Source of the DNA: Guillardia theta CCMP2712
Lineage: Eukaryota > Protista > Cryptophyta
Length of the DNA stretch: 64,000 nt
Reading direction: 5' to 3'
Assembly (NCBI RefSeq): GCF_000315625.1
Contig: NW_005434639.1
Location: forward strand, 1-64,000
Positions 1-18,647 of this stretch are shown here, piece by piece. A program made the translations under genes and the position numbers. The notes under the pieces were generated by a model. The model saw only the letters and a list, made by a program, of their open reading frames with translations, was not told where the DNA came from and made no database searches. Positions within the stretch are counted from its first letter, which is position 1, and each line of letters starts with the position of its first letter.

Positions 1-202
1 CCTGCCTCAGATAAAGGGATCCTGCCTCAGATAAAGGGATCCTGCCTCAGATAAAGGGATCCTGCCTCAGATAAAGGGATCCTGCCTCAGATAAAGGGAT
101 CCTGCCTCAGATAAAGGGATCCTGCCTCAGATAAAGGGATCCTGCCTCAGATAAAGGGATCCTGCCTCAGATAAAGGGATCCTGCCTCAGATAAAGGGAT
201 CC
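1..202. repeat. Perfect 20-bp tandem array (CCTGCCTCAGATAAAGGGAT) x10, running off the window start
   Basis: Ten identical units read directly; same unit recurs at 14626-14879; no spacers. Confidence 0.98.
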
Positions 203-222
203 ACTAAACCCTAAACCCTAAA
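202..222 (-). repeat. Short telomeric tract (one CACTAAA variant + 2 CCCTAAA; TTTAGGG on -)
   Basis: cactaaa-ccctaaa-ccctaaa between the 20-mer array and the truncated collagen-like ORF. Confidence 0.9.
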
Positions 223-2637: not shown

Positions 2638-2643
2638 ATTTTA

Positions 2644-2904
2644 TTAATCACTCATATTTAATTTTTTAAGCTCCTCTCTGGCCTTCCTATTGAATTCTTC
2701 CCAAAAATTATTACATTTTATATTATCTTCCATAGTAAAATAAAGCGTGGTCTTTTCATTTGTTATATTAAATTCTTTTGATATCTCAGCATTTTGTTTA
2801 ATTATCTTATTTCTATAATATTCTCTCGACATCTGCTTTTTTTTCTCTATATATATTGGGTCTATTCTGTATTTATTAAAGTTCATTTTATTAAAACAGA
2901 GCAA
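2644..2904 (-). CDS. Small basic hypothetical viral-type protein
   Basis: 86-aa ORF exactly filling the gap between two larger ORFs of the cassette. Confidence 0.45.
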   Translation of the reverse strand: MLCFNKMNFNKYRIDPIYIEKKKQMSREYYRNKIIKQNAEISKEFNITNEKTTLYFTMEDNIKCNNFWEEFNRKAREELKKLNMSD

Positions 2905-2909
2905 AATAA

Positions 2910-3680
2910 ATGAGCAACCCGAGAGGCAGCAAAAACGGAGAGGTCGTTTTTAATTCTAAAAATGACGAAGGCATGTTATGGGATGAGTTCAAAATAAAAT
3001 ATAATGAATACTTAAACACTAGCGCCTTCTATATTATAAGAACCCCTAAAACAATAAATGGAAAAGGTAACCTTATAAAACTTGGTATATCTTCCGTTGG
3101 TTCTTCTGAAATCATAAGGAGGTTATCAGACTATGAAAAATATTATGATGGAGACTTTAGGGTATTACATCTTAGGGTTTGGTATCAGTATGTAAAAGGA
3201 ACAAATCAGGAGGGAGCGCCTCAGGAACGTTTCGAGTTGAAAACTAAGCGAAGGATGAAAGAACTAACATCATCAGCTTATGGTAATGAATGGTATAAGT
3301 CAAATGACTTAAAAACTCTACGCGATGTATTGAAAGAGTTTGATAAAGAAAATGAAGATATAAATTATGTACCACCAGAACGCAATAAGTCGCGTAAGGC
3401 AAAGCAAATATCAACCGATACCCTAGTAAGGGTTAAATATGGAAACAAATATTTTAATGGTGTTATATATAATATATCTGTGAAGGATAATAAACCGTGG
3501 TTTAGTGTTATATTTTTCAAAGACTATAAAATTAATAATAATGATTTAGGAGGATATGACAAGGAAGAGATAAGAGAGGCTATAACCAAATATGAAGATT
3601 GGGAAGAAAAAAACAAAGAACTTTCAAAAAAGCTCAAATCTGAATGGTCTAGGTTTAAAAATAAGGAAGGTATCCATTAA
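2910..3680 (+). CDS. GIY-YIG superfamily (T5orf172/MUG113-like) nuclease with possible C-terminal Tudor-like domain
   Basis: FYIIR...LIKLGIS...RRL..Y...E...GNEWY motif order; C-terminal VRVKYGNKYFNGVI...FSVIFFKDY. Confidence 0.6.
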   Translation: MSNPRGSKNGEVVFNSKNDEGMLWDEFKIKYNEYLNTSAFYIIRTPKTINGKGNLIKLGISSVGSSEIIRRLSDYEKYYDGDFRVLHLRVWYQYVKGTNQEGAPQERFELKTKRRMKELTSSAYGNEWYKSNDLKTLRDVLKEFDKENEDINYVPPERNKSRKAKQISTDTLVRVKYGNKYFNGVIYNISVKDNKPWFSVIFFKDYKINNNDLGGYDKEEIREAITKYEDWEEKNKELSKKLKSEWSRFKNKEGIH

Positions 3681-3760
3681 GTCGGGTCTTATGACATAAT
3701 ATGAAATTTTATCTTCTTCTAAAAGTAAATATACCATTTAATATATTTTGAGATATTAAA

Positions 3761-4132
3761 ATGTCTGAACCTAGAGATAAAGAATTATATGAAAAGATTA
3801 AAAAGAAAATAACAGACAAATATAAGCCCTCAGCATATAGGAGTGGTCTTATTGTAAAAGAATATAAAAGAGAGTATTTTAAGAAACATAAGAATAATAA
3901 TTCTTACACAGGTGATAAGAAAAAAAGTAACCTTAAAAGATGGTTTAATGAGAAATGGAGGAATCAGAGAGGAGAGGTAGGATATGATAAGAAAGGTGAC
4001 ATATACCGACCGACAAAAAGAATTAACAGTAAGACCCCTATAACAATAAAAGAGCTTTCACCCTCACAAATAAAGAGGGCTCAAGAAGTAAAGAAGGCCA
4101 CAGGAAGAGTTAAGAATTTTTCTAAGTTATGA
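3761..4132 (+). CDS. Small basic protein of a large-DNA-virus family (DUF5872-like)
   Basis: P.DKELYEKIK...PSAYRSGLIVKEYK...LKRWFNEKW...YRPTKRINSKTPIT.EL; family recalled from memory, not searched. Confidence 0.6.
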   Translation: MSEPRDKELYEKIKKKITDKYKPSAYRSGLIVKEYKREYFKKHKNNNSYTGDKKKSNLKRWFNEKWRNQRGEVGYDKKGDIYRPTKRINSKTPITIKELSPSQIKRAQEVKKATGRVKNFSKL

Positions 4133-4159
4133 GTGCGTGCCCGCCTCAGGAGATGGCCA

Positions 4160-4243
4160 TTTTTCGTTTTTTTCTTGCGGGAATCGAACCCGCGCGCTTA
4201 TCGCCGTAACGATGGCATATTGGCCACTCGACTATTAGGTCTT
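4160..4243 (-). ncRNA. tRNA-derived/Pol III-type element (A box + B box with T-arm), no intact cloverleaf
   Basis: Minus strand TAGTCGAGTGG (A box) ... GCGGGTTCGATTCCCGC (T-arm/B box); TATATA ~25-30 nt upstream; A-rich run downstream. Confidence 0.6.
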
Positions 4244-4648
4244 TTAGGGGGTAGGGGTGGTAGTCCTATATAAAATAAATTCTCATGCGTATTTTTGGGA
4301 GGGTACGCATAAGATACACACAGAGACAATGCGAAAAAATTTTTCGCATGAGAATGATAAGAAAATATTTTATTTTTCTTGAATTTCACACATCACATGT
4401 GAAAAAACACAAAACTTCACACTGAAAATCACAAAAAACAAAAAAATTTCAATCAAAACACATCAAGACCATAAGCCCAACGGAGTGACAGAGAGCCCCA
4501 TCATTCATTCCCCTTCCCCCCCCAGTCGCCCACCTCTTCCCTCCATGACCCTGAGCTGCGCCTGTCTCCTTGGTGCTAGGCTTGTTTTCCTTCCCTGCCT
4601 GTGCTCCATAGGTGGCTTGCCCATGAGCCGCGCCTGCCCCCCATCGGA

Positions 4649-6709
4649 CTAGGTCGACTCGCTTCCCCTTCTTGCCGTCCATAGCATGTGTTGCACCTCC
4701 AGCAGTTGCTTGATTGCTGCTGTCTTGATGCCTTCCCATTCCGTGTCTTCCACCCTTAGCACCCTGAAATTCTCATGCCATTCCCTTTCCATGATCGATC
4801 CTTTCACTCCTGCTATGAATGTTGCTTGTTCAACTTCATGGTCAGGTAGCAAAACTGTGATTTCTGCTCGTAGGGGGGCATATTTCTCTTCCTTTTCCTG
4901 AAATTTCTTCTTCAGGCATTCCAGGCTTGTTTGTTCGACTCCGTCATATTCCAATGTCCTTGCAAATTCGATGAGGACAATGCGTTTGATGCTTGCAAAG
5001 TAGCAGCAACCGTCAGGTATCCAGTGCCCTTCTCGGTGCATTGAAGTCCCCATCGCTTCCATCACGATGCGTATTGGAGTGTCCCACCATGAATTGACCT
5101 GTACCCTTTGTTTCCTCCAACTCTGCTGCAGTCTTACCTTGATCTTCTTCGTGACTTCATTGTGTGCTTTTTGAATCATATCTTGAAACTGCTTGCACGC
5201 TAGCTGAACATGACCCCAGGTTTCTTCTCGGTCTGGACAGTGAGGACAACATGGTGAGTTAGTCTTCCCCCATTGAAAGAGCTTCTTCCTCGTCGGTGCT
5301 GAGAAGGTGATCGCTTGGATAGCTGTTCGCGTAACTGACCCTTCGCATTGTTTGAACCCTCTCCCTAGTAAATCTCTTCCCACATGCATTTCGAGCATGA
5401 ATTTCTCTGTCAAGGTGAGGTCTCCCGCTCGAATCCTTGCCACCATTGTCTGTTGTCTGATAATGTAGTCCCATTTCTTCAAGCGATCGAATCCTGATGT
5501 AGGATTTTCTTCTCCTGCAATGATGAATTCCATTGGACTATCGTAGATTGCTTTCTCCCATCCCGAGGCAAATGTTTGTTTTGCTTGCTTGGCCATTTCC
5601 TTTGCCTCTTGAATGTTTCTATGAGATTCTTTTGCTAGTTGGAGTCGGATCCTGATTCCCCTCCCTTCGAGTTTCCTCATGCAAGTGAGTAACCGATCAT
5701 GTAAGTCCTCCAGCAGTTCGTCTTCGTATCGCATGGTATCCATTCGCAACGTATTTGTCATAAAGCGGTGGAAACGTGTGGACTGGTACATTATTGTGAC
5801 TTGATTTCCCCTTTTGATCTGTATTCCTTCCTCAAGGACATGTTGCAGAAGTAAACCGATTGCGATTGTGTTCGCTCGGATGATGCTGCACTTCCCATTG
5901 ATTTTCATCCCTCCTCCTGACGTCATCTCTTTTTGTTGGAGAACATATCCTACTCGCATGGATCTGTTTTTTCTGCCCTGCATGATGTCTCCTTCAATAG
6001 CTGCTGTGAAATGCCTTCCGCCTTGATGATCGCTGCACGGCTGGATCTGATCCCTTCGTCTGTTACACAGCTCCTCATACGTTGGGAGGATGTTGTCCTG
6101 AAGCTGGACTCGTAAGTATGTTGGGAGTGTGTGCCTAACTAGTATCCATAACTCCTCTGCAGTCTTCATCAAACACCTATTCCCTGTTTGCCAGAAGTTT
6201 GCTGCATAAGCTATTTGAGCGCCTTTCGGGACCCGGCTGATAATTTCAAAACCTTCTGGTATCTCATCAATGTTATTCTTCCATCCTATCAGAATGACAT
6301 GTATTGTATCCAGGATTTGTTCACGAAATCTCTCTTGTTTGTCCATCCAAACCACCACTCTGTGCAGTTCCCTTGCTCTCTTCTTGTCCAGAGCCTGGGG
6401 ATGTGTGTGTAGGGTAGGCCAGTTACGAAATGTACTGATGTCGCATGCTGTAATCTCTGCTAGATGTTGTAAAAACTCGTATGCCAATGGTTGTGTTGTT
6501 TCTTGGCGAACCTCTGATACTACCTCCTCGAGTTGTTGCCACCATGCTGTAGCTTCTGTTTCGCCGTCGTCCAATGCATTAACTATTTCCAGCAGCAGAT
6601 GGATGCTTTGATTGCAGTCTCTTCGGTTATTACCGTCCTCTTCCCTTGTTGCAGATGTGAAGGGAGCCGAGTCCAGTGACGCTTCCAACCATTCTATTGG
6701 TGGATCCAC
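4649..6709 (-). CDS. ORF2 C-terminal fragment: degenerate RNase H-like domain, CCHC zinc knuckle, restriction-like (PD-(D/E)xK) endonuclease
   Basis: CPHC...ETWGHVQLAC, KAHNEV, WIPDG...VLIEFAR, EKEEKY match the RLE-type non-LTR signature. Confidence 0.85.
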   Translation of the reverse strand: MDPPIEWLEASLDSAPFTSATREEDGNNRRDCNQSIHLLLEIVNALDDGETEATAWWQQLEEVVSEVRQETTQPLAYEFLQHLAEITACDISTFRNWPTLHTHPQALDKKRARELHRVVVWMDKQERFREQILDTIHVILIGWKNNIDEIPEGFEIISRVPKGAQIAYAANFWQTGNRCLMKTAEELWILVRHTLPTYLRVQLQDNILPTYEELCNRRRDQIQPCSDHQGGRHFTAAIEGDIMQGRKNRSMRVGYVLQQKEMTSGGGMKINGKCSIIRANTIAIGLLLQHVLEEGIQIKRGNQVTIMYQSTRFHRFMTNTLRMDTMRYEDELLEDLHDRLLTCMRKLEGRGIRIRLQLAKESHRNIQEAKEMAKQAKQTFASGWEKAIYDSPMEFIIAGEENPTSGFDRLKKWDYIIRQQTMVARIRAGDLTLTEKFMLEMHVGRDLLGRGFKQCEGSVTRTAIQAITFSAPTRKKLFQWGKTNSPCCPHCPDREETWGHVQLACKQFQDMIQKAHNEVTKKIKVRLQQSWRKQRVQVNSWWDTPIRIVMEAMGTSMHREGHWIPDGCCYFASIKRIVLIEFARTLEYDGVEQTSLECLKKKFQEKEEKYAPLRAEITVLLPDHEVEQATFIAGVKGSIMEREWHENFRVLRVEDTEWEGIKTAAIKQLLEVQHMLWTARRGSEST

Positions 6710-6747
6710 GGTCTTGCTTTCTTCAATTTGAGATCGCTCAAAGATGG

Positions 6748-9366
6748 CTATGTTCCCTTGAACTTTGAAAGGTAATTGCTTGTAGTGTAACAGAATCTTT
6801 CTTGCTGATTCCCTCCTTCATCATAACAGGTGGGGTCATGTTGGAGCCACCGCCTCAAAATTACCCGGGTACAAGCCTTCGTATTCGTTTCCTCTCTCCC
6901 TTGGTCCGGTCTGGCTAGTTTCTTGTGTGGCTGAAGTTCATGTGGGCTAGCCTCCCTTTTTCCTTTCCTTCTCTTGTTTAGAGGCTTCCCCTCCTCCCTG
7001 GCTGGCCTTCTTCTCTTCCCTGTTCCTGCCTGCTCAAGTCCGAGTTTTGCCCAGATGACATTCGCTTGCAGATATTGTGCAAGGATTTCTTCTGCTTGTT
7101 CCCTTTGCTTTGGGAATGGCCAGAGTCGGATGGGCAGGTGCAGGGAGATGCCCTCGGTATCTGGGACGGGTAAGACACTTGTCATGGAGTGGAAGCCTAC
7201 TTGGGGCAGTAGTCTCCATGCCTTTGCAAAACTCTCCCAGCCTTGCCGAGCAGGAGATGTAGGTAGGGAGTTTTCTCCGGACAGCAGGGAGTTTTCTTCT
7301 GAGATCATCTTGTCCTCCAGGTCATGTAAGATGGCTATTGTCCCCGGTTTCATCTTGCTTTCAATCATTTCCCAACTGATGGTGGTCTGCATTTTTTCCG
7401 CTATCCAGATTGCGAGTCTCCCCGGTCCTCTTATCTCTTCGATCTCGTTGAGTCTGCCCGATCTGATTTCTCGTTGTAGCTGGTTTATTGTTTGACACCC
7501 CCATTGGTTGCACCATGATGTTAGTTTGTGGATCAGACTGCTTTTGATATCATCATCCACCCTGCATTTCTTATTCGTTTCTTTCTCTAGATACCGAATC
7601 GCCGCCCTTCCCAAGATGGGTGCTGGATGGGGGAGTTGGAGGCCTCCTTTGTCCCAAGGTAGGTGAAAGATAGCGTTGCTTGTACTCTTGCTCAATCCCA
7701 TAGCTCTTTTGAATGCTCTGGTCCAGAGGGTATCTAAGGTTTGTAAGTCTGACCAAGACCAGCTCACCAGTACCGCCGAGTATCTAAATATATTGACGAT
7801 GCCTACCTTCACCAGGTAATATTTTTGGGCTGCCGAGTAAGCAGATGATTCAATCAGCTTTGTCAGTTCTTTTGTCTTCTCCAAGATGTGTTCTTTCTCT
7901 CCCCACGTGAAGGGGCAGGTGTGCGCCTTGTTGCCTCTTCCTCCTGGTCTCCACAAGCTGATCCGGATCCCTAGATATTTGAACCATTTTGTCGGTGGTA
8001 GGTTCACAAACTCCTTGTCGAAGAACTTGATGGTCTGTGTTCCTGGGATCTCCCTTCTTAGCCGATAATCAAAGCTGGTGATTTCAGATTTCTTCGTGTT
8101 CAGTTCTAATCCACTCCATCGACAGAATCGCTCTACCACTTGGACAAGCGTTTTCATCTCTCTCACTGAATGTGCTATCAGGACAAGGTCGTCTGCAAAT
8201 GACAGATTATTAGGGTGTTGAGTTGCAATCTCGTCTTGTTTTTGATCGAGCTGTTTGGACAAGATGCTTAGCAGAAGATTTGTTTTTGGCGGACTTGCGG
8301 GGCTGCCTTGGGGTAATCCTCTGAGAAGTGGGATGGCTGCTGTTTCGAACCTCTCTGTCTGAATTTGCAGCGCTATCCCTTGGCTACAACTGATTGCGAC
8401 GTCTACATCACACTGGTGAAAGCCATATACTTCCATGATTTTTGCAATGGATTCGACTGCCACATTGTTAAAGAAGTTTGCAAAGTCGAGGTACAGCAGG
8501 ATGAGGTCGTGTTGATTACTCTGAGCCTCCTCGATGATGTTGAGTAGACGATGACCCTGCCTGATCGTTCCTCCCTCTGGTCTGAAACCTTCCTGGTTGT
8601 TAGTGAGTAGCTTATGTTTTTCAGCAGCTTTTGCCAGTCTGTGCGCTATGACTGCCTGGAAGATCCTCGTTATCGAGGAGAGGACGCATATAGGTCTTTG
8701 ATTCTCCAAGACGTGACATATCTCATTTTTTGGGAGGAGCCTAACTCTCGCGAGCATCTTTAGTGTTTGCTTGTCTCCGATCAAGGCTCGGCTGATTGTC
8801 TTGCCTATTTCCTCCTTTGCACTGTCAGGCAGAGCTTTCAGAATCTCGTTTGAAATCAAATCCATGCCTGCTGCTTTCCGGTTGGCCAGTTTTTGAATCC
8901 ATACTTGGATCTCGCCTGGCTCCAGCGGGTAAGCTATCTCTACATCCCTGGTCGGGTGTTGATTGATTTGCTCTGGGGGTTCGAAGTCCGGTGGTTTGAC
9001 GGAAGTCAGTGATTGACAGCTTTTGCAGAAGAAGAGGATTGATGCTTCTTCGTTTTTCTGGCTTTTGTCATATAACGGAATCAGTCGTCCTTTTGTTTGA
9101 CATTCAGCTCTTGCACAGGTTCCGTTCATGGTACATCCGTTGACTGCAAAGAAGGTTGCCGTGTGGGTTTCATCTTCTAGATCTCTTGCCAATCTCATGG
9201 GGAGGAATTGCTCGATGTTTTTGTATCCTTCCAGGCGCCACCCTCCTGGCTGTGTGATCAGTCCTCGGATGATGGGTACGATTGCGTGTGCAGGCGCCAG
9301 CGTTATGAACAGCTTTTGTGTCAGTGTTGCCAGGTTCCTCGCCCCGAGAACCTCGACGTGCAGCAT
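6748..9366 (-). CDS. ORF2 fragment: non-LTR reverse transcriptase
   Basis: KAAGMD, RPICVL, QEGFR, YLDFANFF, GLPQGSPASP, FADDLVL, GLELNTKKS, KYLG, GGLQL. Confidence 0.95.
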   Translation of the reverse strand: MLHVEVLGARNLATLTQKLFITLAPAHAIVPIIRGLITQPGGWRLEGYKNIEQFLPMRLARDLEDETHTATFFAVNGCTMNGTCARAECQTKGRLIPLYDKSQKNEEASILFFCKSCQSLTSVKPPDFEPPEQINQHPTRDVEIAYPLEPGEIQVWIQKLANRKAAGMDLISNEILKALPDSAKEEIGKTISRALIGDKQTLKMLARVRLLPKNEICHVLENQRPICVLSSITRIFQAVIAHRLAKAAEKHKLLTNNQEGFRPEGGTIRQGHRLLNIIEEAQSNQHDLILLYLDFANFFNNVAVESIAKIMEVYGFHQCDVDVAISCSQGIALQIQTERFETAAIPLLRGLPQGSPASPPKTNLLLSILSKQLDQKQDEIATQHPNNLSFADDLVLIAHSVREMKTLVQVVERFCRWSGLELNTKKSEITSFDYRLRREIPGTQTIKFFDKEFVNLPPTKWFKYLGIRISLWRPGGRGNKAHTCPFTWGEKEHILEKTKELTKLIESSAYSAAQKYYLVKVGIVNIFRYSAVLVSWSWSDLQTLDTLWTRAFKRAMGLSKSTSNAIFHLPWDKGGLQLPHPAPILGRAAIRYLEKETNKKCRVDDDIKSSLIHKLTSWCNQWGCQTINQLQREIRSGRLNEIEEIRGPGRLAIWIAEKMQTTISWEMIESKMKPGTIAILHDLEDKMISEENSLLSGENSLPTSPARQGWESFAKAWRLLPQVGFHSMTSVLPVPDTEGISLHLPIRLWPFPKQREQAEEILAQYLQANVIWAKLGLEQAGTGKRRRPAREEGKPLNKRRKGKREASPHELQPHKKLARPDQGREETNTKACTRVILRRWLQHDPTCYDEGGNQQERFCYTTSNYLSKFKGT

Positions 9367-10260
9367 GGTTTGATGTCTTGCACTCCAAAAAGTTTTGCTT
9401 GATTCTTTGGAGTTGCTCTGGAGGAATGTCTCGATTAACGGGTTCAGTTCTTGAAGATATGCTGTCTCCGGCTGTTGCAGCGCTGGCTGGAGATCTCTCC
9501 ATGACGTTGTTTGGGTGGCACTTCTCTGGCAGTTGACTCAGCATTGGGGCTTTGGGCTTAAAGTCTGACTTCTTGCCCATTGCATTTTGAGACTCTTTAC
9601 TCCCTATCGTGCCCAAGCGTCTTCTTCGTTCTTCGCATATTTTCAGGAATATCTCTTGGTCTTGTGCTGCGCAGATCTCCTTGAATTTGGTCATATTCTC
9701 TCTTATTTCTGCATGTAAGCTCGACTCCTTGTGTGCGCGATCAATAAAGTCTGGAATTTCTGAAGCGTTTCTTAAGTCCTTGTGAAGTTGCTTGATTTTG
9801 CGCTTCAGATCCATTTGAATTTTGGATGCATGTCTTTTCCCGCTGGAGCCTCGTAGCGGAATTTCCTTGATGGGGAGGGCTGTTGTTATCAATTCGAGAA
9901 TGTCGCAATCTTGATGTAGAGCTTGTGCCGCTTTTATCTTCTCATCAAGTGCTATTGCCCATTCCACGCCTAGTCTTCCCGATAGCTTGTCCATCTCGAC
10001 CACCCTTTTCTTTCGTCGAGGGGTTGCTTCTCGATCCCTCCTTTGCGGGAGGATTTCAATCTTTGGGATGGCTTGCTTACCCTCAGCATCGAGAGATCTC
10101 ACATTCACTACAAGTGCTCTGTGGTCGACTGCGGCTCCTATGATGCAATCCTCTGCGGTCTGCGATATTAAGCTTACTGTGCGAGATGGATGGTGTAATG
10201 CAAAGACATGATCCAGTTTTGCTTGGTGATGACCCTGCTTGTACCATGTGGAGAGTGCTG
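9170..10260 (-). CDS. ORF2 fragment: end of APE domain plus APE-RT linker
   Basis: This frame reads STWYKQGHHQAKLDHVF...VDHRALVV upstream of the annotated 10108 start, i.e. the C-terminal APE motifs. Confidence 0.75.
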
Positions 10261-11492
10261 CTTCTGCTCATCTTCTCGCAAGTGACCATCTGGGATCGTC
10301 CAAGTTCGTTTAAGCCTTGTTCCATTCTCTCATCTGCACGGTGCACACTCGATTTGCTCCCGTATCCGACTCTCATGAGGATCTCTGGATGTTGTCGAGA
10401 TGCATTGAAGTCGCCTCCTATGATGGTGAGCTTGACACTTGGCTCCGTCTTGAGCATCTGGCTCAGCGTTGCCCACATCTCGTCTTGATCCTCCCCTTGC
10501 GCTGCAGTAGGAAAGTGGGTGTTACAGATCCCTATCGGTTCTTTTTTTCCGATCTGTAAAAGTTGTATTCTTTTTTGGAGATTCTGCTCTTCCAACATGT
10601 CAGCGCGGCGGCAGAGCAGGGGGGAGGGACGAGGGAGAAGGTCCGCATGTACTAGCGTCACAAGGCGAAGATCACTCTTACCCTTTCTCCCCTCCCCTGC
10701 ACCTTTCGTCATGAACACTCGGTAGCATCCCCATTCTTTCTTGATCATCATTCGGAGATCTGCCTCCTTTCGTTTTCCCCCGACCAAAACTTCTTGAAGT
10801 AGCACGACTGTTGGTTGATATGTTTCAATCAGGTATCCTAGGATGTGTTTCAGCACAAATTGACTGCATCCATTGACATTGTGAGAAATGATGTTGCCAG
10901 GGGCGTTGTCCTTCCTGTGCGTTTCCACCCATGCTGATTGCACTGACCTGTCGGTGGTGGTCGTGGGTGGTTTGCTGCCTGCTGGTAGGATTTGCTCCTC
11001 CGCCCCCGTTGCCCATTGAAGGTGAGACGAGTTCCCATCTTGCATCTTTGTTGGGCCTGGTAGCTCCTCCTCTCCCCTTGTCTCCTTGTCGTTCTTCGAG
11101 ATTGGCGCTGTGTGCATTGCTTGTGGCGGAGGAGGTGGCTGGAGTGGAGAGACGGGGCATGAAGCAGGAGGTGGGGGAGGGGAGGACGTCAGGATGTCTA
11201 CCTGTGCTGACCTGTCTTGTAGTTGCAGGACCGTCGCGGCTATGAGCTTCGTTGATCCTTGTCCTCCTTGCTCCTGCTCGTCTTCCAATCTCTCCTGTAG
11301 CCGTGCATCTTCAGATGCCTGGGTCGCCTGTAGATCGCCTGCGCGTTCTTGGCCGTCTTCTCGCCTTTCCATCCGGTTAGGTATACGTTCCATGGTGAGC
11401 TCTGCAGCTTGCCATTCCTTGTAACCTGTATCTTGCGCGTGCTGTGCATTGGGTTGTTTCTCGCATGTGCACATGTTGTGCACATGTTCCAT
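10083..11492 (-). CDS. ORF2 fragment: apurinic/apyrimidinic-like endonuclease (APE)
   Basis: IISHNVNG, VVLLQEV, ICNTHFP, IIGGDFNA motifs. Confidence 0.9.
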   Translation of the reverse strand: MEHVHNMCTCEKQPNAQHAQDTGYKEWQAAELTMERIPNRMERREDGQERAGDLQATQASEDARLQERLEDEQEQGGQGSTKLIAATVLQLQDRSAQVDILTSSPPPPPASCPVSPLQPPPPPQAMHTAPISKNDKETRGEEELPGPTKMQDGNSSHLQWATGAEEQILPAGSKPPTTTTDRSVQSAWVETHRKDNAPGNIISHNVNGCSQFVLKHILGYLIETYQPTVVLLQEVLVGGKRKEADLRMMIKKEWGCYRVFMTKGAGEGRKGKSDLRLVTLVHADLLPRPSPLLCRRADMLEEQNLQKRIQLLQIGKKEPIGICNTHFPTAAQGEDQDEMWATLSQMLKTEPSVKLTIIGGDFNASRQHPEILMRVGYGSKSSVHRADERMEQGLNELGRSQMVTCEKMSRSSTLHMVQAGSSPSKTGSCLCITPSISHSKLNIADRRGLHHRSRSRPQSTCSECEISRC

Positions 11493-12405
11493 ACCCCCCC
11501 CCCAGAGCCCATCCAGCAGCAGATGTCTTGCTGATGGGGGGGGACGCCTTGTTGCCTCCCTGTGTTGAAGATATCTTGTTGAAGATATCTTGTTGTTGTG
11601 TTTTCCTTCGTGTCTTTGCGATCAGCAGGAAAATTCCACAATTGTAGCCGTCTGTTTGTTGCAGCCCAGTTGACACACATGCCCTCCATGTCGTGTCGTC
11701 ACAGTGTTCTTGTTGATCGCTAATTGCCTCGGTGATAATCGTCGCCATGAGTGTTGCTAGGTCCATTCGTTGTGCGCCCCCCAATTGAAACTGTGCCTCC
11801 CTTTGGCTTCTGACTGTCCCTAGGTCTCTCTCAAGGGCCGTGCTAAGCGAGTCGACGATGTGTATTCTTTTTGTGTCAACATCTGCCACGATTAGGATCC
11901 AATGATTGCCGTTCTCTACGCAAGGGAATAAGAATGGTTGAGCTGCCCCGGCTAGCAGTCGTTTTGCTCTCCGTGTCCTTCCCTCCTGATCTCTCAAACC
12001 CGCTACTATTCTCGGGAGAACAATGGTCCCTCTCTGCAGCCCAAATTGGTTTCTAGTTTGCTCGCTGGCATACCTCGTGCCTTGGAGCCATGCTATTTGA
12101 AATCTGTCTTCCGCTGGTTCTAAATTTCGGTTTACCTCAACGATTAATGCCTCCATAACGTCCTCAGAGAGAAATCCATCTTCTCCTGAGTTGAGCAGCG
12201 CCGCTGCTCCGTACTCTCTATTGTTTTCCCGTAGACTCCAGGGGATCTCCCCTATCAAGTCGAATGTTTGTATTTTTCTGTTTTTTTCTGTTTTTTTCTT
12301 GTCATTGTTTTTCTCACCTTCTTGTCTCTTTCTGCTTGATTCCACCACGCCCTGGTGCCCACTGTCCCACCTGCCCTCAACTCCTCCTCCTCCTCCTGCT
12401 TCCAT
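11377..12405 (-). CDS. ORF2 N-terminal fragment: Ulp1/SENP-like (C48) cysteine protease
   Basis: FLSEDVM...PCVENGNHWILIV...IHIVDSL...QQTDGYNCGIFLL: His-Asp-Gln-Cys order of the C48 family. Confidence 0.85.
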   Translation of the reverse strand: MEAGGGGGVEGRWDSGHQGVVESSRKRQEGEKNNDKKKTEKNRKIQTFDLIGEIPWSLRENNREYGAAALLNSGEDGFLSEDVMEALIVEVNRNLEPAEDRFQIAWLQGTRYASEQTRNQFGLQRGTIVLPRIVAGLRDQEGRTRRAKRLLAGAAQPFLFPCVENGNHWILIVADVDTKRIHIVDSLSTALERDLGTVRSQREAQFQLGGAQRMDLATLMATIITEAISDQQEHCDDTTWRACVSTGLQQTDGYNCGIFLLIAKTRRKTQQQDIFNKISSTQGGNKASPPISKTSAAGWALGGGYGTCAQHVHMRETTQCTARARYRLQGMASCRAHHGTYT

Positions 12406-14552
12406 TAGGCTTGCGCTGCTGGGAAGGAGTCAAGCGACATCTCTTCCGATTCTGCCGCCATGCTCCCAGCCTCGGGTACATCTTCCATTCGAGCGTCTTT
12501 CATCTGTAGCTCACTGCTCAAAACAAATTTCAATTCGTTTCTATCTCCCAGCATTCCTACGAGGGAGAGCGCCGTTTCCTCCAGGAATTTATTCAAAGCA
12601 ATGAAGAGAAGGTCAGTTTTCAAGGGCTTCTCCTCATTTGGTGCGAAAGCGCTGCTCTTGCGTTTCGCTACCTTCCACGTATGCTTGCCTGCAATCATCC
12701 TGACTCGTTCGCGCAGTTGCTTGCTCACGGCATTCTCTGCCGCGTTGGCACCCTTATCAGCCCACTCTTGTAGCGTGGGGAAGGATGCATTTCCTGGGCT
12801 CTCCGGAGCCATCTCTTGCACCGCGTCATCAAGATGGAGTTGAAGCTGCCCTTGCTGTTGCAGCTCGCTCCTAGTTACGTCAGCAATAGTTTCCTTAAGT
12901 TCTTCGACGACCACGTCCGTTCCCGCATCTGGGAGGTTGGTCTCGTTGATAATTGAACTGAGCTCGATCTCTTTCCACACAGTTCCCTCTGCTCTGGTCC
13001 CCGTCGTTTGTGACCTGGCCTCAGGGTTAGACTGATCGCGAGTTGCCTGAGGCGACACTTGGAGGTTCAGACTGCTCGCTGTCGTTTGGATTTCAACTGT
13101 GCCTTGCCAGCAGAGGAGCTGTGTGGGGAATTCAGCCATCATCTTTCTTGCACTACTTTCACTGCGTAGCCGGAGAATGATACCAGACCCATCCCAGATC
13201 CCTGTTTCTGGATCGCATTGGAGGTGGATCCGTTGGAGATCTTTTTCCACCTGTGGATCAAAGCAAGCGACAGCCCTCCGAATGTTTCGGATGACTTTTG
13301 CTCTGCCCGTTTCGTCACTTGCACAGATTTTTTCGATCTCATTTCGGGAGAACTTCCCTGACGGCACAGGAGAGGAGATTTGTACCGAGTACAGCATCTC
13401 TGCTCCCGTTGCCATTGCCGTGCCCTCTTGTCGCACCGCATTCTTCATATTCTTGTGCAGCGCCGTTGCTTCCATCTGCACTGAGAACCATTTCAGTATT
13501 TTGTCATTCTCTGAGACCAGTCCCAAAGTGACTCCTGCACGATCCTTTCCATGTCGATCGAATGCTTGAAGAACGATGTCCGCTGCTTCAAGGCTCGAGC
13601 ACGTTGCGATCCAGTCGACCTCTCTGTTCTGGTTGACTATTTCTATTCCTACCGCAGCGAACACCTTCTTTGGCGGTAGGTTCCTCTTGGGGGGGAGGTT
13701 CACTGTCATTCCCGCGTTTGGGATCAGATCAATAATCGCTAATCCCTGCTTCAGGCATAGCTGCCTGTAGATCTCACATATGTCACCTGTGCTCGAATCG
13801 TTGAGCATCAGGAGTTGGGCCACCTCAGCTAGGATTCCAACTCTGCTCATGTTCTCCTTCTTTGGCCGCATCTTGAACGAGATCGGTGGGTTGGCTGCTG
13901 GGTTCACTGCTAGAATCCTCCTGCCTGCCACCTTGAAGGTACCATCTCCTTTCCAGAGTTTCTCAGCCGCCTCATTGCGGACAAATGTGATCACTGCTGG
14001 GATCTCCGCTGCCTGCACAAGGTCAGGCTTCAAGGGAGCCTTGAAGATCAGGCTCCTGCTGTCTTGCGTCTGATCGACGATCAAGCCTTGCTCTTCAAGC
14101 TTGAGGCATAAGTTTTCCACCTGTCTGGAAAAGTATGCAGGGATCCCAAGTACCTTCATGGTAATCGTCTGCACATTGGTGCCCTGATCATCATATGATC
14201 TGGCCTCCATCTGCCTTTGTCTGTCAGCTTGGAACTCTGACAGGTACCACTGCTTGACATCGTCACCCCACTGCCTGAGCCCTTTCGGATTCTCCAGTGA
14301 CGAGGGTTCAGCGAAGCTGCATGTCTGACTGATGGCTTCGGCTAAGGCTTCCAAGGAAATTTCTTTTGCTTTCAGAGCTTTGCTCGTCCTGCTTTTGGGG
14401 TTCTGCCTTGCGAATTCATCCAGTCTCCGCATCAGTTCGGCTGATGACGGCATCGTTGCAGCTTCCGTCTGCCTCTTGAGGTAGCTGGAGGTACGGTACT
14501 GCACGATCTCGTCAGGGTTCACAATAGATATTGGCCACATGTTTCGAAGCAT
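12405..14552 (-). CDS. Retroelement ORF1 (715 aa) with RRM-like region
   Basis: Intact ORF upstream of ORF2; MKVLGIP...AVITFVRNEAAEKL...VAGRRILAV fits an RRM pattern; paralog at 17392-18462. Confidence 0.8.
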   Translation of the reverse strand: MLRNMWPISIVNPDEIVQYRTSSYLKRQTEAATMPSSAELMRRLDEFARQNPKSRTSKALKAKEISLEALAEAISQTCSFAEPSSLENPKGLRQWGDDVKQWYLSEFQADRQRQMEARSYDDQGTNVQTITMKVLGIPAYFSRQVENLCLKLEEQGLIVDQTQDSRSLIFKAPLKPDLVQAAEIPAVITFVRNEAAEKLWKGDGTFKVAGRRILAVNPAANPPISFKMRPKKENMSRVGILAEVAQLLMLNDSSTGDICEIYRQLCLKQGLAIIDLIPNAGMTVNLPPKRNLPPKKVFAAVGIEIVNQNREVDWIATCSSLEAADIVLQAFDRHGKDRAGVTLGLVSENDKILKWFSVQMEATALHKNMKNAVRQEGTAMATGAEMLYSVQISSPVPSGKFSRNEIEKICASDETGRAKVIRNIRRAVACFDPQVEKDLQRIHLQCDPETGIWDGSGIILRLRSESSARKMMAEFPTQLLCWQGTVEIQTTASSLNLQVSPQATRDQSNPEARSQTTGTRAEGTVWKEIELSSIINETNLPDAGTDVVVEELKETIADVTRSELQQQGQLQLHLDDAVQEMAPESPGNASFPTLQEWADKGANAAENAVSKQLRERVRMIAGKHTWKVAKRKSSAFAPNEEKPLKTDLLFIALNKFLEETALSLVGMLGDRNELKFVLSSELQMKDARMEDVPEAGSMAAESEEMSLDSFPAAQA

Positions 14553-14625
14553 TCTCGATGGTTTCCCGAGCTTCCTGCGTTCCTGGCGACTCTTGCTCTA
14601 CCACGCAGGGACCCCGCTGATCTGC

Positions 14626-14785
14626 ATGCCTCAGATAAAGGGATCCTGCCTCAGATAAAGGGATCCTGCCTCAGATAAAGGGATCCTCTCAGATAAAGGG
14701 ATCCTGCCTCAGATAAAGGGATCCTGCCTCAGATAAAGGGATCCTGCCTCAGATAAAGGGATCCTGCCTCAGATAAAGGGATCCT
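14626..14785. repeat. 20-bp tandem array (~8 units, one 18-bp variant) abutting the 5' end of unit A
   Basis: Same unit as 1-200; variant cctctcagataaagggat at 14685-14702. Confidence 0.97.
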
Positions 14786-14825
14786 CCTAAACCCTAAACC
14801 CTAAACCCTAAACCCTTAAACCTTA
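14786..14825 (-). repeat. Telomeric tract inside the 20-mer array
   Basis: (CCCTAAA)n with cccttaaa/ccttaa variants. Confidence 0.95.
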
Positions 14826-14879
14826 ATCCTGCCTCAGATAAAGGGATCCTGCCTCAGATAAAGGGATCCTGCCTCAGAT
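14826..14879. repeat. Second block of the 20-bp repeat (~2.7 units)
   Basis: Read directly, between two telomeric tracts. Confidence 0.95.
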
Positions 14880-14947
14880 CCCTAAACCCTAAACCCTAAA
14901 CCCTAAACCCTAAACCCTAAACCCTAAACCCTAAACCCTAAACCCTA
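14880..14947 (-). repeat. Interstitial telomeric tract (CCCTAAA) x~9.5
   Basis: Perfect heptamers, followed on + by (ATT)n to ~14963. Confidence 0.97.
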
Positions 14948-15125
14948 TTATTATTATTATTATGTGAGTTTATTAGAATGCTAGAATGTTGCTCGGCCTC
15001 GTTGTGGGCTTATGCAATTTGATCCTAGTCTAAAGAGGCGCTCGAGCACTGGGAGTACACGGCCTACAATGCGAACCCTGCTTCTGAGGCGTCTTTCTAC
15101 TTTCTACTTCTGCTGTCTTCTCTTG

Positions 15126-15298
15126 GCTTCCTCAGCCTCAGTCAGGAGAGTTGCCTCTCCTCACCTTGGCCTTCGGTCACCACCTACTCTACCTCCATTC
15201 AGCTTCCTCAGCCTCAGTCAGAAGAGTTGCCTCTCCTCACCTTGGCCTTCGGTCGCCACCTACTCCTCCTCCATTCAGCTTCCTCAGCCTCAGTCAGG
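15126..15298. repeat. 76-bp tandem repeat, ~2.3 copies
   Basis: gcttcctcagcctcagtcag... starts at 15126, 15202 and 15278. Confidence 0.9.
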
Positions 15299-15629
15299 TA
15301 CGGGCTCGCCCCGTCTTCTTCCTCGCCCTCGCCTTGCTCTTCCTCCATGTCTTCCTCTTCTTCGCCATCTTCCCTCATCTCCACCCGCAGTCGGTCCTTC
15401 TTGTCCACCCATAGCGTTGCCTTTCTCAATTGACCTTGGAGCTCTAAAACGTTTCGCGGTGAGGGTGGTAGATTCAAATCCACGCATACCACGCCTCATG
15501 TGGGGGCGGGGTGGGTCTTCCGACCGTGTTCCGAATTCAAATCACGAAGAGCCAAGCAGAACTTTTTCAGGGGTAGGGTCTTCTTGAGTACAATTTCTTG
15601 GTACCAGTTAGTACAGTCCGAACCATGTG

Positions 15630-16518
15630 ACTTTAATAACTTCCTCTATGACAGAAGGAATAAGAAGTACTTGCTTGTGGACTTTGGGCTGGCAGAGAAA
15701 CAAATGCAGTCATCAGGCCGCAGCATCGGCAACATCTTGCCCTGTGAGGTTTCTACGGCCAGCTCTCGCTCCTCGCGGAATCAAAAGGAGCAGGAGAAGC
15801 TAGAGATGGCGCAGCAGATGGCGAAGAGGCGGATCATGTTGGGCGTCAGCAAGACGAACGCATCGGTGACAGTGAGGAACTCAGGGGTCAAATTCGAACG
15901 TCCAGTCAAACGCGCGGGAACTCGGGGATACCGAGCGCCCGAAGTGCTCATGGGCATGCAGTGCCAGACCACAGCAGTGGACGTGTGGGCTGCTGGGGTA
16001 GTACTGCTTACCCTGCTGTGCCGCACGACACAGTTCCAATGGTTCCAGTATAACGACATAGTCACGGCAACGATGGAGATCTACGGGTACGCTCTTTGTG
16101 TACCTTGGAAGTGCGCTTGTCTGACTGTCTGAGCAGCTTGCGCATGTACATCAAGAGCATGGATGCTGTGTGGAAGCTCCTCGACGTTAAGGTAAAATTG
16201 TTGTCGTCGGCGTTGTTGTATCAAGAGGATGACGATGAGGTGATATGGGTTGGCCGCGAGGCCTGAGGTTGCTAACTTGATGTCATTCAGATTCCACCAT
16301 TGGAACTGCATCTCAGCTATGCCCGCGGTTTCAAGCAAACATGGCGGACCTTGTCAAGCTCCCTGGGCGCGCATGCGGGATGCAAGGACTGGCTGGAGGT
16401 GGATGAGAAACATGGGATCTGGGACTTCCTCAACTGCTGCCTCAACATCGATCCCCGCACGAGGATTACAGCACTGGAGGCTCTGAAGCATCCCTTCCTC
16501 ATTAGTGCTGTCAAGTAA
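15630..16518 (+). pseudogene. CDC7: 5'-truncated Cdc7-like Ser/Thr kinase (C-lobe only), two introns retained
   Basis: NNFLY...YLLVDFGLAE, long insert, RAGTRGYRAPEVL, QTTAVDVWAAG, RITALEALKHPF; no Gly-loop, VAIK or HRD upstream. Confidence 0.75.
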
Positions 16519-17391
16519 ACCGTCTCTACCCGTAGCTTTCTCCTTCCTCTCCTCTCATGTCCTCCTCGCCCTCCTGCCTTCCTCGCTAGTGGTCTTGAGT
16601 AAACACGGTCTCTCCTCCGGCATCTCCTCTCGCAGCGATCAGGCATATCAACTAGCCTGGCCTCCCAGGCGTCCATTTCCCTTCCAACCCCTCCCCTCTC
16701 CTTCCCCCAGCCTCTCAAACTCCTCACCTCCTCACAAATGACACCGCCATATTACAATAGGTTGGGAGAAGCCTCAAAAAACGCAATCATGGCAAAGCAA
16801 CAGGAAGTCTCTTGAAATATGTTTCTTATTCAACCGACGAAGCATTCAGGTAAAGGAAGCTAGGGCGTCAACACAACAAGGAAAAATTTCGATGAGATGC
16901 ATACCTTACACATTCAACCTACTATAGGTGTGATTCTCAGCCAAGAATTGAGCTGTTTGATCTCAGTACTTGCCTGGCAGTTTCAGGAGTTAGTATTGAG
17001 GGGCCATGGTCCTTGACTGCGCTCAGCAGCTGAGCAAACAGTCCCTGAGTACATTGGGAGTAGTGGGATAGGGAAGAGACGGGGCAAGTGTGAGGTCGTT
17101 TACAAGTGTTTTAGATTGATACGAGAAGTTTGCACTACCCCCTACCCCTCAACACGGGCTGGAGGCCGTTGGAAAGATTCAAATCATTTGAATACCTACC
17201 CCGAGCCTCCTCATGATTATTTAGTCAACTATACACGCCTATTCATATCAAATAGAGGAAGGTTTTGCTCAACATTGCCCTTCTCGTCTTGGATGGCCCG
17301 GCAGCCCCTGGCAACGAAAAAGGTACATAAATTGACGGAGCAAACATTTTTAGCTCAATTTTCTCTTGCCGCTTTAATTTGACTAAAACTA

Positions 17392-18462: not shown

Positions 18463-18508
18463 ACCTCTTGCTTGCAGCTTCCTTGGCGCCCTGGCGGCTT
18501 CCCCTACA

Positions 18509-18550
18509 CCTGACGAGGAGCCATGCTGCCTGACGAGGAGCCATGCTGCC
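18509..18550. repeat. Different 20-bp tandem repeat (CCTGACGAGGAGCCATGCTG) x2 at the 5' end of unit B
   Basis: Two exact copies between the ORF1 leader and the telomeric tract. Confidence 0.93.
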
Positions 18551-18647
18551 CCTAAACCCTAAACCCTAAACCCTAAACCCGAAACCCGAAACCCTAAACC
18601 CGAAACCCGAAACCCGAAATCCTAAACCCGAAACTCTAAACCCGAAA
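18550..18647 (-). repeat. Telomeric tract degenerating proximally (CCCTAAA to CCCGAAA/TCCTAAA/CTCTAAA)
   Basis: ~14 heptamers: perfect distally, variant proximally. Confidence 0.95.

What the first reader, a model, noticed from the sequence alone, without database searches (positions are those of the whole stretch)
4649..14627. Non-LTR retrotransposon with both APE and restriction-like endonucleases, a separate ORF1 and a Ulp1 protease
Seen: ORF2 order is C48 protease, APE, RT, RNase H-like, CCHC, PD-(D/E)xK. Established: most non-LTR elements carry APE or RLE. Both together define the rare Dualen/RandI group of green algae, described as one long ORF with a Josephin-like protease. A two-ORF, Ulp1-bearing, telomere-associated version looks like a distinct lineage and bears on the RLE-to-APE transition.
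Basis: partly seen in the sequence, partly recalled or inferred. Interest (0 to 1): 0.88.

Follow-up and report, generated by a model that had tools for sequence, protein, structure and literature searches.

The report
Telomere-targeting dual-endonuclease retrotransposon in Guillardia
This is a damaged but full-length copy of a jumping gene of the cryptophyte alga Guillardia theta that carries two different DNA-cutting enzymes and inserts only into the chromosome-end repeat TTTAGGG. Its domain layout is already published for cryptophytes, but its telomere targeting, two-gene layout and gag-only partner element appear undescribed.

Summary
Window 14879-4505 (minus strand) is one non-LTR retrotransposon. 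ORF1 (715 aa) is joined to ORF2 by an overlapping stop-start UAAUG. ORF2 runs C48/Ulp1 protease, APE, RT, RNase H-like, CCHC, then an R2-type PD-(D/E)xK nuclease.

The window copy has four frameshifts and a truncated 3' UTR. Intact relatives exist with ORF1 of 712 aa and ORF2 of 2573 aa. Nesting of two elements is excluded.

The genome is Guillardia theta, a cryptophyte and not a green alga. The same ORF2 layout was published for cryptophyte Dualen elements (Dualen-1_GCr, Lescot et al. 2016). The Ulp1-bearing dual-endonuclease architecture is therefore a known kind.

Four features appear undescribed in the literature I could search:
- Strict insertion into TTTAGGG repeats in one register and one orientation, forming arrays at scaffold ends.
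- The bicistronic UAAUG layout with an RRM-containing ORF1.
- Tandem repeats of the element's own 5' terminal 20 nt, and (AAT)n tails.
- A roughly fourfold more abundant 2.7-kb partner that encodes only an ORF1 homologue and shares the 3' end, recalling HeT-A/TART.

The RNase H-like domain has lost its catalytic residues.

Verdict: a new variant of a known kind, useful for asking which nuclease cuts which strand.

The parts
14880..14947 (-). Target telomere repeats, (TTTAGGG)x9-10, immediately 5' of the element
14627..14879 (-). 5' terminal tandem 20-mers (AGGATCCCTTTATCTGAGGC), interrupted once by a short telomere-repeat run. The unit repeats the element's own first 20 nt
14553..14626 (-). 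Unique 5' UTR (..GGCATGCAGATCAGCGGGG..)
12405..14552 (-). ORF1, 715 aa, with no Pfam family. Residues about 385-500 (nt about 13053-13400) are predicted to be an RRM fold. The C-terminus is acidic
12403..12407 (-). UAAUG: the ORF1 stop overlaps the ORF2 start by one base. It is conserved in 7 of 7 full-length G. theta copies and in L020 and L021
4649..12405 (-). ORF2. It is collinear with all 2573 residues of the intact P0175 but split into five frame segments by four frameshifts
11506..12225 (-). C48/Ulp1-like cysteine protease domain (approximate limits)
   Evidence: The His, Asp, Gln and Cys motifs (NHW, VDS, QQTDxYNCG) were read directly in P0175
10204..10915 (-). APE-type endonuclease (approximate limits). 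It spans one frameshift in this copy
7441..8835 (-). Reverse transcriptase. The Pfam core lies at 7960-8733 and the FADD motif is present
5513..5980 (-). RNase H-like domain with degenerate catalytic residues (E, D and D of DEDD replaced)
5195..5248 (-). CCHC zinc knuckle (C-x2-C-x8-H-x4-C)
4652..5104 (-). Restriction-like (PD-(D/E)xK) endonuclease of R2 type. PD, E and K..KY are intact
4505..4651 (-). Truncated 3' UTR. Homology to intact copies ends at about 4543. The terminal part, with the CTAATAAACTCAAATAAT(AAT)nAG end, is missing
226..4504 (.). AT-rich fragment of a multicopy endogenous giant-virus-like element. It is not part of the retrotransposon. It lies between the truncated 3' UTR and a short telomere repeat
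1..225 (-). About 2.5 telomere repeats (205-225), then ten 20-mers (1-202). This is the 5' end of the next, more distal element copy, cut off by the scaffold end
14948..18549 (-). The proximal neighbour, a copy of the ORF1-homologue-only partner family. It ends in CTAATAAACTCACATAAT(AAT)nAG next to the telomere repeats
18550..18647 (-). Innermost, degenerate telomere repeats (TTTAGGG/TTTCGGG). They mark the boundary with unique chromosome sequence

Best explanation
Window 14879-4505 (minus strand) is a full-length but inactivated copy of a telomere-repeat-specific LINE of Guillardia theta. It belongs to the dual-endonuclease (Dualen/RandI) group, in the C48-bearing subgroup known from cryptophytes.

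Shown:
- One bicistronic unit encodes ORF1p (RRM-containing, probably the RNA-binding partner) and ORF2p, linked by UAAUG.
- ORF2p reads C48 protease, APE, RT, inactive RNase H-like domain, CCHC, R2-type RLE.
- All 27 3' ends examined abut GGTTTAG repeats in one register, after a variable (AAT)n tail.
- Every full-length 5' end follows ..GGTTTAG(G).
- The sense strand always runs with the G-rich strand towards the scaffold end.

Inferred:
- ORF2 is translated by termination-reinitiation, as in SART1.
- ORF2p nicks the C-rich strand inside telomere repeats at or just before CCCTA^AA. That 3' OH primes reverse transcription of the (AAU)n-ended RNA, possibly helped by pairing with read-through telomere sequence. 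The second strand is cut within 0-4 bp.
- With two nucleases available, the likeliest division of labour is one strand each. Which nuclease takes which strand is unknown.
- The arrays grow by repeated insertion, alternating with terminal erosion and telomerase healing.
- An ORF1-only partner with the same 3' end is mobilised in trans by ORF2p.
For: - Domains and order.
- Not nested: collinear full-length copies in subfamilies with 78-100% RT-segment identity. Single open frames span APE to RLE (L003 2261 aa, L019 2157 aa). Intact ORF2 of 2573 and 2575 aa occurs in L020 and L021.
- Group membership: in the RT tree the window groups with P0175, P0176 and Hanusia P0177 (support 100). This sits inside a 28-row clade (100) that holds the SET/C48 proteins, and inside a 68-row clade (99). 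In that clade 38 of 38 proteins with room have APE and 27 of 33 have the full RLE. An RLE-only clade is sister.
- The RT is closer to R2 (E 4e-21) than to L1 ORF2p (2e-11) among solved structures.
- UAAUG: 7 of 7 copies plus L020 and L021. The SART1 precedent is in PMC3894237.
- Telomere specificity: 27 of 27 3' junctions in one register. 5' junctions are.
- Genome distribution: the 3' motif occurs 133 times against 0 for the reversed control. Of 46 listed minus-strand hits, 41 lie within 26 kb of a scaffold start. For 17 of 20 scaffolds checked, the last plus-strand hit (the last listed one for C72) lies within 40 kb of the scaffold end.
- Eroded ends capped by telomere repeats.
- Partner family.
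- Recent activity: copies 97-100% identical.
Against: - No cleavage or retrotransposition data exist, so the nick sites are read from junctions that are ambiguous by up to 3-4 nt. TSDs cannot be seen in a tandem-repeat target.
- All G. theta copies I examined carry at least one frameshift or truncation, so current activity in this strain is unproven. Some frameshifts could be assembly errors.
- Scaffolds end inside the arrays, so true chromosome termini were not seen. A few arrays are internal (C6, C31, C46).
- The ORF1 model is poor overall (pLDDT 46). The RRM call rests on one 115-residue stretch at Z 8.3, which is near the tool's own noise level.
- I could not compare directly with Repbase Dualen/RandI, NeSL, R4, CRE or Proto1 sequences.
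- 3'-truncated units followed by telomere repeats could arise by internal priming instead of erosion and healing.
Confidence: 0.85

Rival explanations
1. The APE-RT part and the CCHC-RLE part, or the C48 part, come from two different elements nested or fused in this one locus. The architecture would then be an accident of insertion or assembly.
For: The window ORF2 is broken into five frame segments. The scaffold end is a repeat-rich, collapsed region.
Against: The same order is seen in the six other full-length G. theta copies fetched, in subfamilies with 78-100% RT-segment identity, and no segment stands out by a very different identity. Single uninterrupted frames cross every domain boundary (C48+APE+RT in L007, APE to RLE in L003, everything in P0175 and P0176). 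Relatives at only 20-35% identity keep APE, RT and RLE in the same order.
Confidence: 0.01
2. The elements do not target telomere repeats with an endonuclease. Instead they attach to free chromosome ends (end-primed, as in HeT-A/TART or EN-deficient Penelope-like elements), and telomerase then adds repeats on top.
For: The arrays sit at scaffold ends. Some units have eroded 3' ends capped directly by TTTAGGG. A viral DNA fragment is capped in the same way.
Against: Priming from the G-strand 3' end would place the element's 3' end towards the centromere. Here the 5' end is proximal in every copy, which is the orientation expected from a nick in the C-rich strand. The 3' junction register is fixed in 27 of 27 cases. 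Both nucleases keep their catalytic residues in the intact copies.
Confidence: 0.08
3. It is a distinct, previously unrecognised clade outside Dualen/RandI that gained a second nuclease independently.
For: No Repbase references could be included. The family differs from its relatives in having ORF1, lacking SET and having a dead RNase H. It shares only 20-35% identity with the relatives outside the Guillardia/Hanusia family.
Against: The RT, APE and CCHC-RLE modules are each homologous to those of the SET/C48 proteins that match the published cryptophyte Dualen layout, and the RT nests among them with support 100. Independent gain is unnecessary.
Confidence: 0.06

Closest known systems
Cryptophyte Dualen elements (Dualen-1_GCr of Geminigera cryophila, Dualen-5_CCu; Lescot et al. 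2016, PMC5029228)
   Same: They share the C48 peptidase, APE, RT, RNase H, CCHC and RLE in the same order, and a cryptophyte host. The RT's nearest relatives (P0151, P0018, P0161) show this layout.
   Different: The published element is one 5287-aa protein with an N-terminal SET methyltransferase. Here there is no SET domain, there is a separate 712-715 aa ORF1 coupled by UAAUG, and the RNase H is degenerate. Telomere targeting is not reported for the published elements. I made no direct sequence comparison, because Repbase is not available.
Chlamydomonas Dualen/RandI (Kojima and Fujiwara 2005; the active Dualen-4b_cRei, PMC9977147)
   Same: Both carry APE and RLE flanking the RT, with an RNase H and a cysteine protease.
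   Different: The Chlamydomonas elements are dispersed, with long (median 900 bp) target-site duplications. Here insertion is into one register of a 7-bp repeat, with 0-4 bp of possible duplication. The protease type of the Chlamydomonas elements could not be checked here.
SART1 and TRAS1 of Bombyx mori (telomere-repeat-specific LINEs of the R1 clade)
   Same: Both insert into the telomerase-made repeat in a fixed orientation and register and co-exist with telomerase repeats. SART1 also links ORF1 and ORF2 by UAAUG (PMC3894237).
   Different: SART1 and TRAS1 have only an APE nuclease, a gag-like ORF1 with zinc knuckles and a poly(A) tail (from my own knowledge). Here there are two nucleases, a C48 protease, an RRM-type ORF1 and an (AAT)n tail. 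The resemblance is convergent.
HeT-A/TART/TAHRE of Drosophila
   Same: Both form head-to-tail arrays at chromosome ends built from an RT-encoding element plus a more abundant gag-only partner. Spliced antisense transcripts, as known for TART (from my own knowledge), are seen.
   Different: Drosophila lacks telomerase repeats and its elements face the opposite way, with the 3' end proximal (end-primed). Here telomere repeats separate the units and the 5' end is proximal.
R2 (RLE-type LINE; solved structures 9dou, 9nl2, 8gh6)
   Same: The C-terminal CCHC plus PD-(D/E)xK module has the same fold (Foldseek E 5e-8, TM 0.64). The RT is the closest among solved RTs. Both are site-specific.
   Different: R2 has no APE, no protease and no ORF1. 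It has N-terminal zinc-finger and Myb DNA-binding domains and targets 28S rDNA.

Membership tests
Dualen/RandI group of non-LTR retrotransposons | An APE-type endonuclease N-terminal to the RT, in the same ORF | tested here: met
   Pfam Exo_endo_phos scores 26.3 bits (cut-off 24.5) in L011. The domain lies in one frame with C48 and RT in L007 and P0175. The catalytic N, E, D-N and D-H motifs were read in P0175.
Dualen/RandI group of non-LTR retrotransposons | A restriction-like PD-(D/E)xK endonuclease with a CCHC motif, C-terminal to the RT, in the same ORF | tested here: met
   The alignment has invariant C, H, C, PD, R, K and Y columns. The AF2 model has pLDDT 87 and its top seven Foldseek hits are all R2 proteins.
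Dualen/RandI group of non-LTR retrotransposons | The RT groups with other dual-endonuclease elements, between RLE-only and APE-only clades | tested here: inconclusive
   Among unnamed database relatives the RT sits in a 99%-supported clade in which 38 of 38 proteins have APE and 27 of 33 have the full RLE. An RLE-only clade is sister and APE-only LINEs are outside. No named Dualen, R2, NeSL, R4, CRE, L1 or Proto1 reference could be included, and the tree is FastTree only.
Dualen/RandI group of non-LTR retrotransposons | An RNase H domain between the RT and the RLE | tested here: met
   The domain is present and alignable to the Pfam-positive RNase H of relatives. However E, D and D of the DEDD tetrad are replaced in the Guillardia/Hanusia family, so it is probably inactive.
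Cryptophyte C48-bearing Dualen subgroup (Dualen-1_GCr type) | A C48/Ulp1 peptidase N-terminal to the APE | tested here: met
   Pfam PF02902 scores 23.9-32.1 bits (cut-off 20.7) in the window and three other copies. It is also found in relatives P0151, P0018 and P0161.
Cryptophyte C48-bearing Dualen subgroup (Dualen-1_GCr type) | An N-terminal SET methyltransferase within a single giant ORF | tested here: not met
   No SET domain is found in ORF1 or ORF2. ORF1 shows no similarity to the N-termini of the relatives. The element has two ORFs instead of one.
Telomere-repeat-specific LINEs (a functional class, for example SART1 and TRAS1) | Insertion into the telomerase repeat at a fixed register and in a fixed orientation | tested here: met
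   All 27 3' junctions read (AAT)nAG|GGTTTAG. The 5' junctions follow ..GGTTTAG(G).

The most novel reading that the evidence does not exclude
Guillardia theta chromosome ends are built from arrays of two cooperating elements interleaved with telomerase repeats. One is a dual-endonuclease LINE. The other is an abundant ORF1-only partner that it mobilises. This would be a third, independent invention of a HeT-A/TART- or SART/TRAS-like telomere system, in a cryptophyte. Within it, the APE and the R2-type RLE would each cut one defined strand of the TTTAGGG repeat. That would make it the first dual-endonuclease element whose two cleavage steps can be assigned on a known 7-bp target.
Probability: 0.35. 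Interest if true: 0.8.

Novelty: new variant of a known kind. Interest (0 to 1): 0.6.

Why it matters
Dualen elements are the only LINEs that keep both the ancestral restriction-like nuclease and the derived APE nuclease. They are central to the question of how one replaced the other. What each nuclease does is unknown, because the described Dualens insert at dispersed sites with long, variable duplications.

A Dualen lineage with a fixed 7-bp target, a fixed register and natural intact copies makes that question directly testable. The test is nicking assays of the separate nuclease domains on TTTAGGG duplexes.

The arrays also add a cryptophyte example to the few known cases where retrotransposons occupy telomeres, complete with a gag-only partner. 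They also show chromosome-end healing that trapped a piece of an endogenous giant-virus-like element.

Tried and rejected
1. The representative-library search used a copy (L019) that has a stop before the CCHC/RLE, so the RLE was not in that query. I recovered RLE homology afterwards with local phmmer on the hits.
2. The sequence search of the C-terminal 722 aa against PDB found nothing. Only the fold comparison found R2.
3. ORF1 has no Pfam hit, no similarity to the N-termini of relatives and only family-internal homologues. The AF2 model is poor except for residues 390-500 and 540-680.
4. My first RLE label in the tree also caught the zf-RVT-like zinc knuckle of APE-only LINEs. I corrected this by requiring coverage of the nuclease part.
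5. The iterative local search for C48 did not extend beyond the close family. Pfam was needed.
6. The 2005 Dualen paper and the 2009 RTclass1 paper are not held, so the 'Josephin-like' statement is unchecked.
7. The protein-atlas search gave only generic RT clusters. The search of earlier findings returned nothing. ARAGORN found no tRNA in the tRNA-like stretch near 4200.
8. I did not build a consensus ORF2, because natural intact ORFs (P0175, P0176) made it unnecessary.
9. I considered and rejected the idea that the AT-rich 4.3 kb is contamination or a 3' transduction. It has 82-97% identical copies elsewhere in the genome.
Full report
**What is in the window.** On the minus strand, open frames run from about 14600 down to 4650. 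Pfam assigns Peptidase_C48 to 11377-12405, Exo_endo_phos (weak here) to 10083-11492, RVT_1 (E 1.5e-28) to 6748-9366 and a marginal zf-RVT zinc knuckle to 4649-6709. The 715-aa ORF at 12405-14552 has no family. A tblastn of an intact relative (P0175, 2573 aa) covers all of its residues 1-2573 on the window, in five frame segments. This copy is therefore full-length in ORF2 but carries four frameshifts, near 11434-11492, 10254-10282, 9503-9531 and 6754-6775. At two of these sites other copies in sequencing runs have 11 extra bases (9507 and 10254). Those two breaks at least are real differences between copies.

**The restriction-like endonuclease.** No Pfam model and no PDB sequence match exists for the last 290 residues. 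An alignment with the C-termini of 18 relatives, 14 of them only 20-24% identical, has invariant C92, H104, C109, P169-D170, R188, K210 and Y214. It also has a conserved acidic residue in LIEFAR/LEFTR. This is the CCHC ... RPD ... E ... K..KY signature of R2-type nucleases, and it is intact in the window copy. The AlphaFold model built on that alignment has mean pLDDT 87. Its seven best Foldseek matches are all R2 retrotransposon proteins (E 5e-8 to 4e-4, TM 0.55-0.64 over about 240-270 columns). They are followed by PD-(D/E)xK cap-snatching nucleases.

**Other domains.**
- The C48 domain passes Pfam's cut-off in four copies. In P0175 it shows the His (NHW), Asp (VDS) and Gln..Cys (QQTDSYNCG) motifs.
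- The APE domain passes the cut-off in L011 (26.3 bits) and weakly resembles exonuclease III and L1 endonuclease.
- The RNase H-like domain aligns to Pfam-positive RNase H domains of relatives. In Guillardia and Hanusia the RAEL glutamate, the TDS aspartate and the NE.AD aspartate are replaced (IRANTIA, YQST, QEAKEMA). These positions are at least 90% conserved in 21 relatives. The domain is probably a structural remnant.

**Not a nested artefact.** The genome holds at least 49 places matching the RT segment. Seven full-length copies, in subfamilies whose RT segments are 78-100% identical, are collinear with the window. Single frames cross every boundary:
- C48+APE+RT in L007 (1397 aa);
- C48+APE in L011;
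- APE to the stop in L003.

Two contigs from other samples (L020, L021) carry completely intact elements, with ORF1 of 712 and 713 aa and ORF2 of 2573 and 2575 aa.

**Host and relatives.** ORF1 homologues are named GUITHDRAFT_114135 and GUITHDRAFT_121998 [Guillardia theta CCMP2712], and one lies on a 41,711-bp contig identical in length to C270. The genome is G. theta, a cryptophyte. The nearest named relatives are from Hanusia phi (46-47% identity). Long relatives at 30-34% RT identity come from MMETSP and marine metagenomes. By Pfam they read SET-C48-RT-RNaseH-zfRVT (P0151), SET-C48-APE-RT (P0018) and C48-RT-RNaseH (P0161). Their C-termini match the CCHC-RLE module and several match the APE.

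[quoted passage not shown] LINE/Dualen is also reported as common in cryptophyte genomes (PMC12747079).

**RT tree.** I built a FastTree of 154 RT domains.
- The window groups with P0175, P0176 and the Hanusia protein (support 100).
- This group lies within a 28-row clade (100) that holds the SET/C48 proteins.
- That clade lies within a 68-row clade (99) in which 38 of 38 proteins with N-terminal room have APE and 27 of 33 with C-terminal room have the complete RLE.
- A 13-row RLE-only clade is sister, and APE-only LINEs lie outside.
- The other dual-endonuclease subclade carries a PCIF1-like domain, in one case with a PHD finger, instead of C48.

Among solved structures the RT is closer to R2 (E 4e-21) than to L1 ORF2p (2e-11). 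Named Repbase references could not be included.

**Two ORFs.** The ORF1 stop and the ORF2 start overlap as UAAUG in all seven full-length G. theta copies, including the 83%-identical subfamily, and in L020 and L021. The same pentanucleotide couples ORF1 and ORF2 of the telomere-specific SART1 (PMC3894237). ORF1 shows no similarity to the N-termini of the single-ORF relatives. Its AF2 model is poor overall (pLDDT 46). Residues 385-500 (pLDDT about 60-80) align to RRM domains in all 50 best rows (Z up to 8.3, rmsd 2.1-2.8 Å over 75-80 residues). This is suggestive, not proven.

**Telomere specificity.**
- The 5' end of every full-length copy is (TTTAGGG)n, then 1 to about 25 tandem copies of the element's own first about 20 nt, then the body ..GGCATGCAGATC... 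The repeat unit is AGGATCCCTTTATCTGAGGC in the window, a related 20-mer in another subfamily and a 25-mer in C270.
- The true 3' end, seen in C320, L020 and L021, is ..GAGTCTAATAAACTCAAATAAT(AAT)nAG followed by GGTTTAG repeats.
- All 27 3' junctions retrieved have the same register and a variable (AAT)n tail.
- The 3' motif occurs 133 times in the genome and 0 times for the reversed control.
- Of the 46 listed minus-strand hits, 41 lie within 26 kb of a scaffold start. For 17 of 20 scaffolds checked, the last plus-strand hit (the last listed one for C72) lies within 40 kb of the scaffold end, and for 13 within 12 kb.
- Scaffolds end inside the arrays.

The sense strand is always continuous with the G-rich strand, with the 5' end proximal. 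That is the orientation produced by target-primed reverse transcription from a nick in the C-rich strand. It is the opposite of end-primed HeT-A/TART. From the junctions, the primer could end no later than CCCTA, and the two flanks allow 0-4 bp of duplication. This is inference.

**Array history.** Some units end prematurely and are capped directly by telomere repeats: the unit upstream of the C141 copy, the 3' UTR in C260 and the viral fragment in the window. This fits terminal erosion and telomerase healing between insertions. In the window the 3' UTR stops matching intact copies near 4543. From about 4504 to 226 it is replaced by 30%-GC DNA. That DNA encodes a DUF5872 protein (E 9e-34), a collagen-repeat protein and others. 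It has 82-97% identical copies on other scaffolds, so it is a fragment of an endogenous giant-virus-like element. Its last ORF runs into 2.5 telomere repeats, which are followed by the 20-mers of the next element at the scaffold start.

**A partner element.** The proximal neighbour (window 18549-14948) begins after degenerate telomere repeats with its own 5' repeats (GGCAGCATGGCTCCTCGTCA). It encodes only an ORF1 homologue (34% identity) and ends in CTAATAAACTCACATAAT(AAT)nAG. On C183 and C29 this family forms head-to-tail units of about 2.7 kb. Most units are separated by telomere repeats. The intact ones carry a 703-754 aa ORF that is 31% identical to ORF1, and none has ORF2 homology. Of the 100 listed 3' ends, 81 are of this CTCACAT type and 19 of the autonomous CTCAAAT type. 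Shared 3' termini and target suggest trans-mobilisation by ORF2p. This is inference.

**Expression.** Contigs from runs that are probably RNA cover much of the 9400-14620 stretch that was laid. They show GT..AG joints on the plus strand, antisense to the element, at 9505-9542, 10720-10832, 11019/11168-11221 and 11393-11823. These joints are absent from the DNA run. Sense expression cannot be judged from contigs.

**Verdict.** It overstates novelty for the Ulp1-bearing ORF2, which is published for cryptophytes. I found no description of the telomere-repeat specificity, the UAAUG bicistronic layout, the 5' terminal repeats, the dead RNase H or the ORF1-only partner in the searchable literature. 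Repbase could not be consulted.

Noticed in passing
window 226-4504: A 30%-GC fragment of a multicopy endogenous giant-virus-like element. It encodes a DUF5872 protein (E 9e-34), a collagen-repeat protein and a lectin-like protein, and has 82-97% identical copies on C259, C94, C164 and C184. It is joined to the truncated retrotransposon 3' UTR and capped by 2.5 telomere repeats, into which its last ORF reads.
   Followed up: partly
window 14948-18549; L042 (C183:73000-82700); L043 (C29:713000-720450): A second telomere-array family of about 2.7 kb (about 3.6 kb in the window). It encodes only a 703-754 aa homologue of ORF1 (31-34% identity), has its own 5' terminal repeats and shares the 3' terminal motif (CTCACAT variant). 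It is about four times more frequent than the autonomous element.
   Followed up: partly
window 9505-11823, plus strand: GT..AG joints antisense to the element in three probable RNA runs but not in a DNA run, plus a poly(A) loose end at 9764. These look like spliced, polyadenylated antisense transcripts over the 5' third of ORF2.
   Followed up: no
window 15500-16132, plus strand: A 210-aa open frame with protein-kinase motifs (GLAEK .. GTRGYRAPEVL .. DVWAAGVVLL) lies inside the 3' part of the proximal partner unit, on the opposite strand. It may be a captured or interrupted host gene fragment.
   Followed up: no
L009 (C260), L022, L026, L027, L029, L033, L036 junctions: At least six further kinds of about 20-nt 5' terminal tandem repeats follow telomere repeats, for example GAGGCCGCCGGAGTAACAGACA, GACCGGGCCCCTGACAGAGGCA and CACCATGGCTGCACGCGTGGT. 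Several related telomere-array families or subfamilies therefore exist, each repeating its own 5' end.
   Followed up: no
P0055, P0104, P0097 (relatives, not in the window): A sister subclade of dual-endonuclease elements carries a PCIF1-like domain between the RT and the RNase H, with a PHD finger in P0055, and has no C48 protease.
   Followed up: no
L003 (C90:1-10000), minus strand: A 5'-truncated copy of the element is fused in frame to the pol of a Ty3/gypsy-like LTR retrotransposon. Its 2261-aa open frame therefore starts in foreign sequence.
   Followed up: no
Sequencing-run result for window 9400-14620: Near-identical sequence (51-71% of sampled words) is held by six metagenome runs, four of them labelled aquatic, freshwater or lake-water, and by runs of a second coded organism. 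Close relatives or the alga itself therefore occur outside the reference culture.
   Followed up: no
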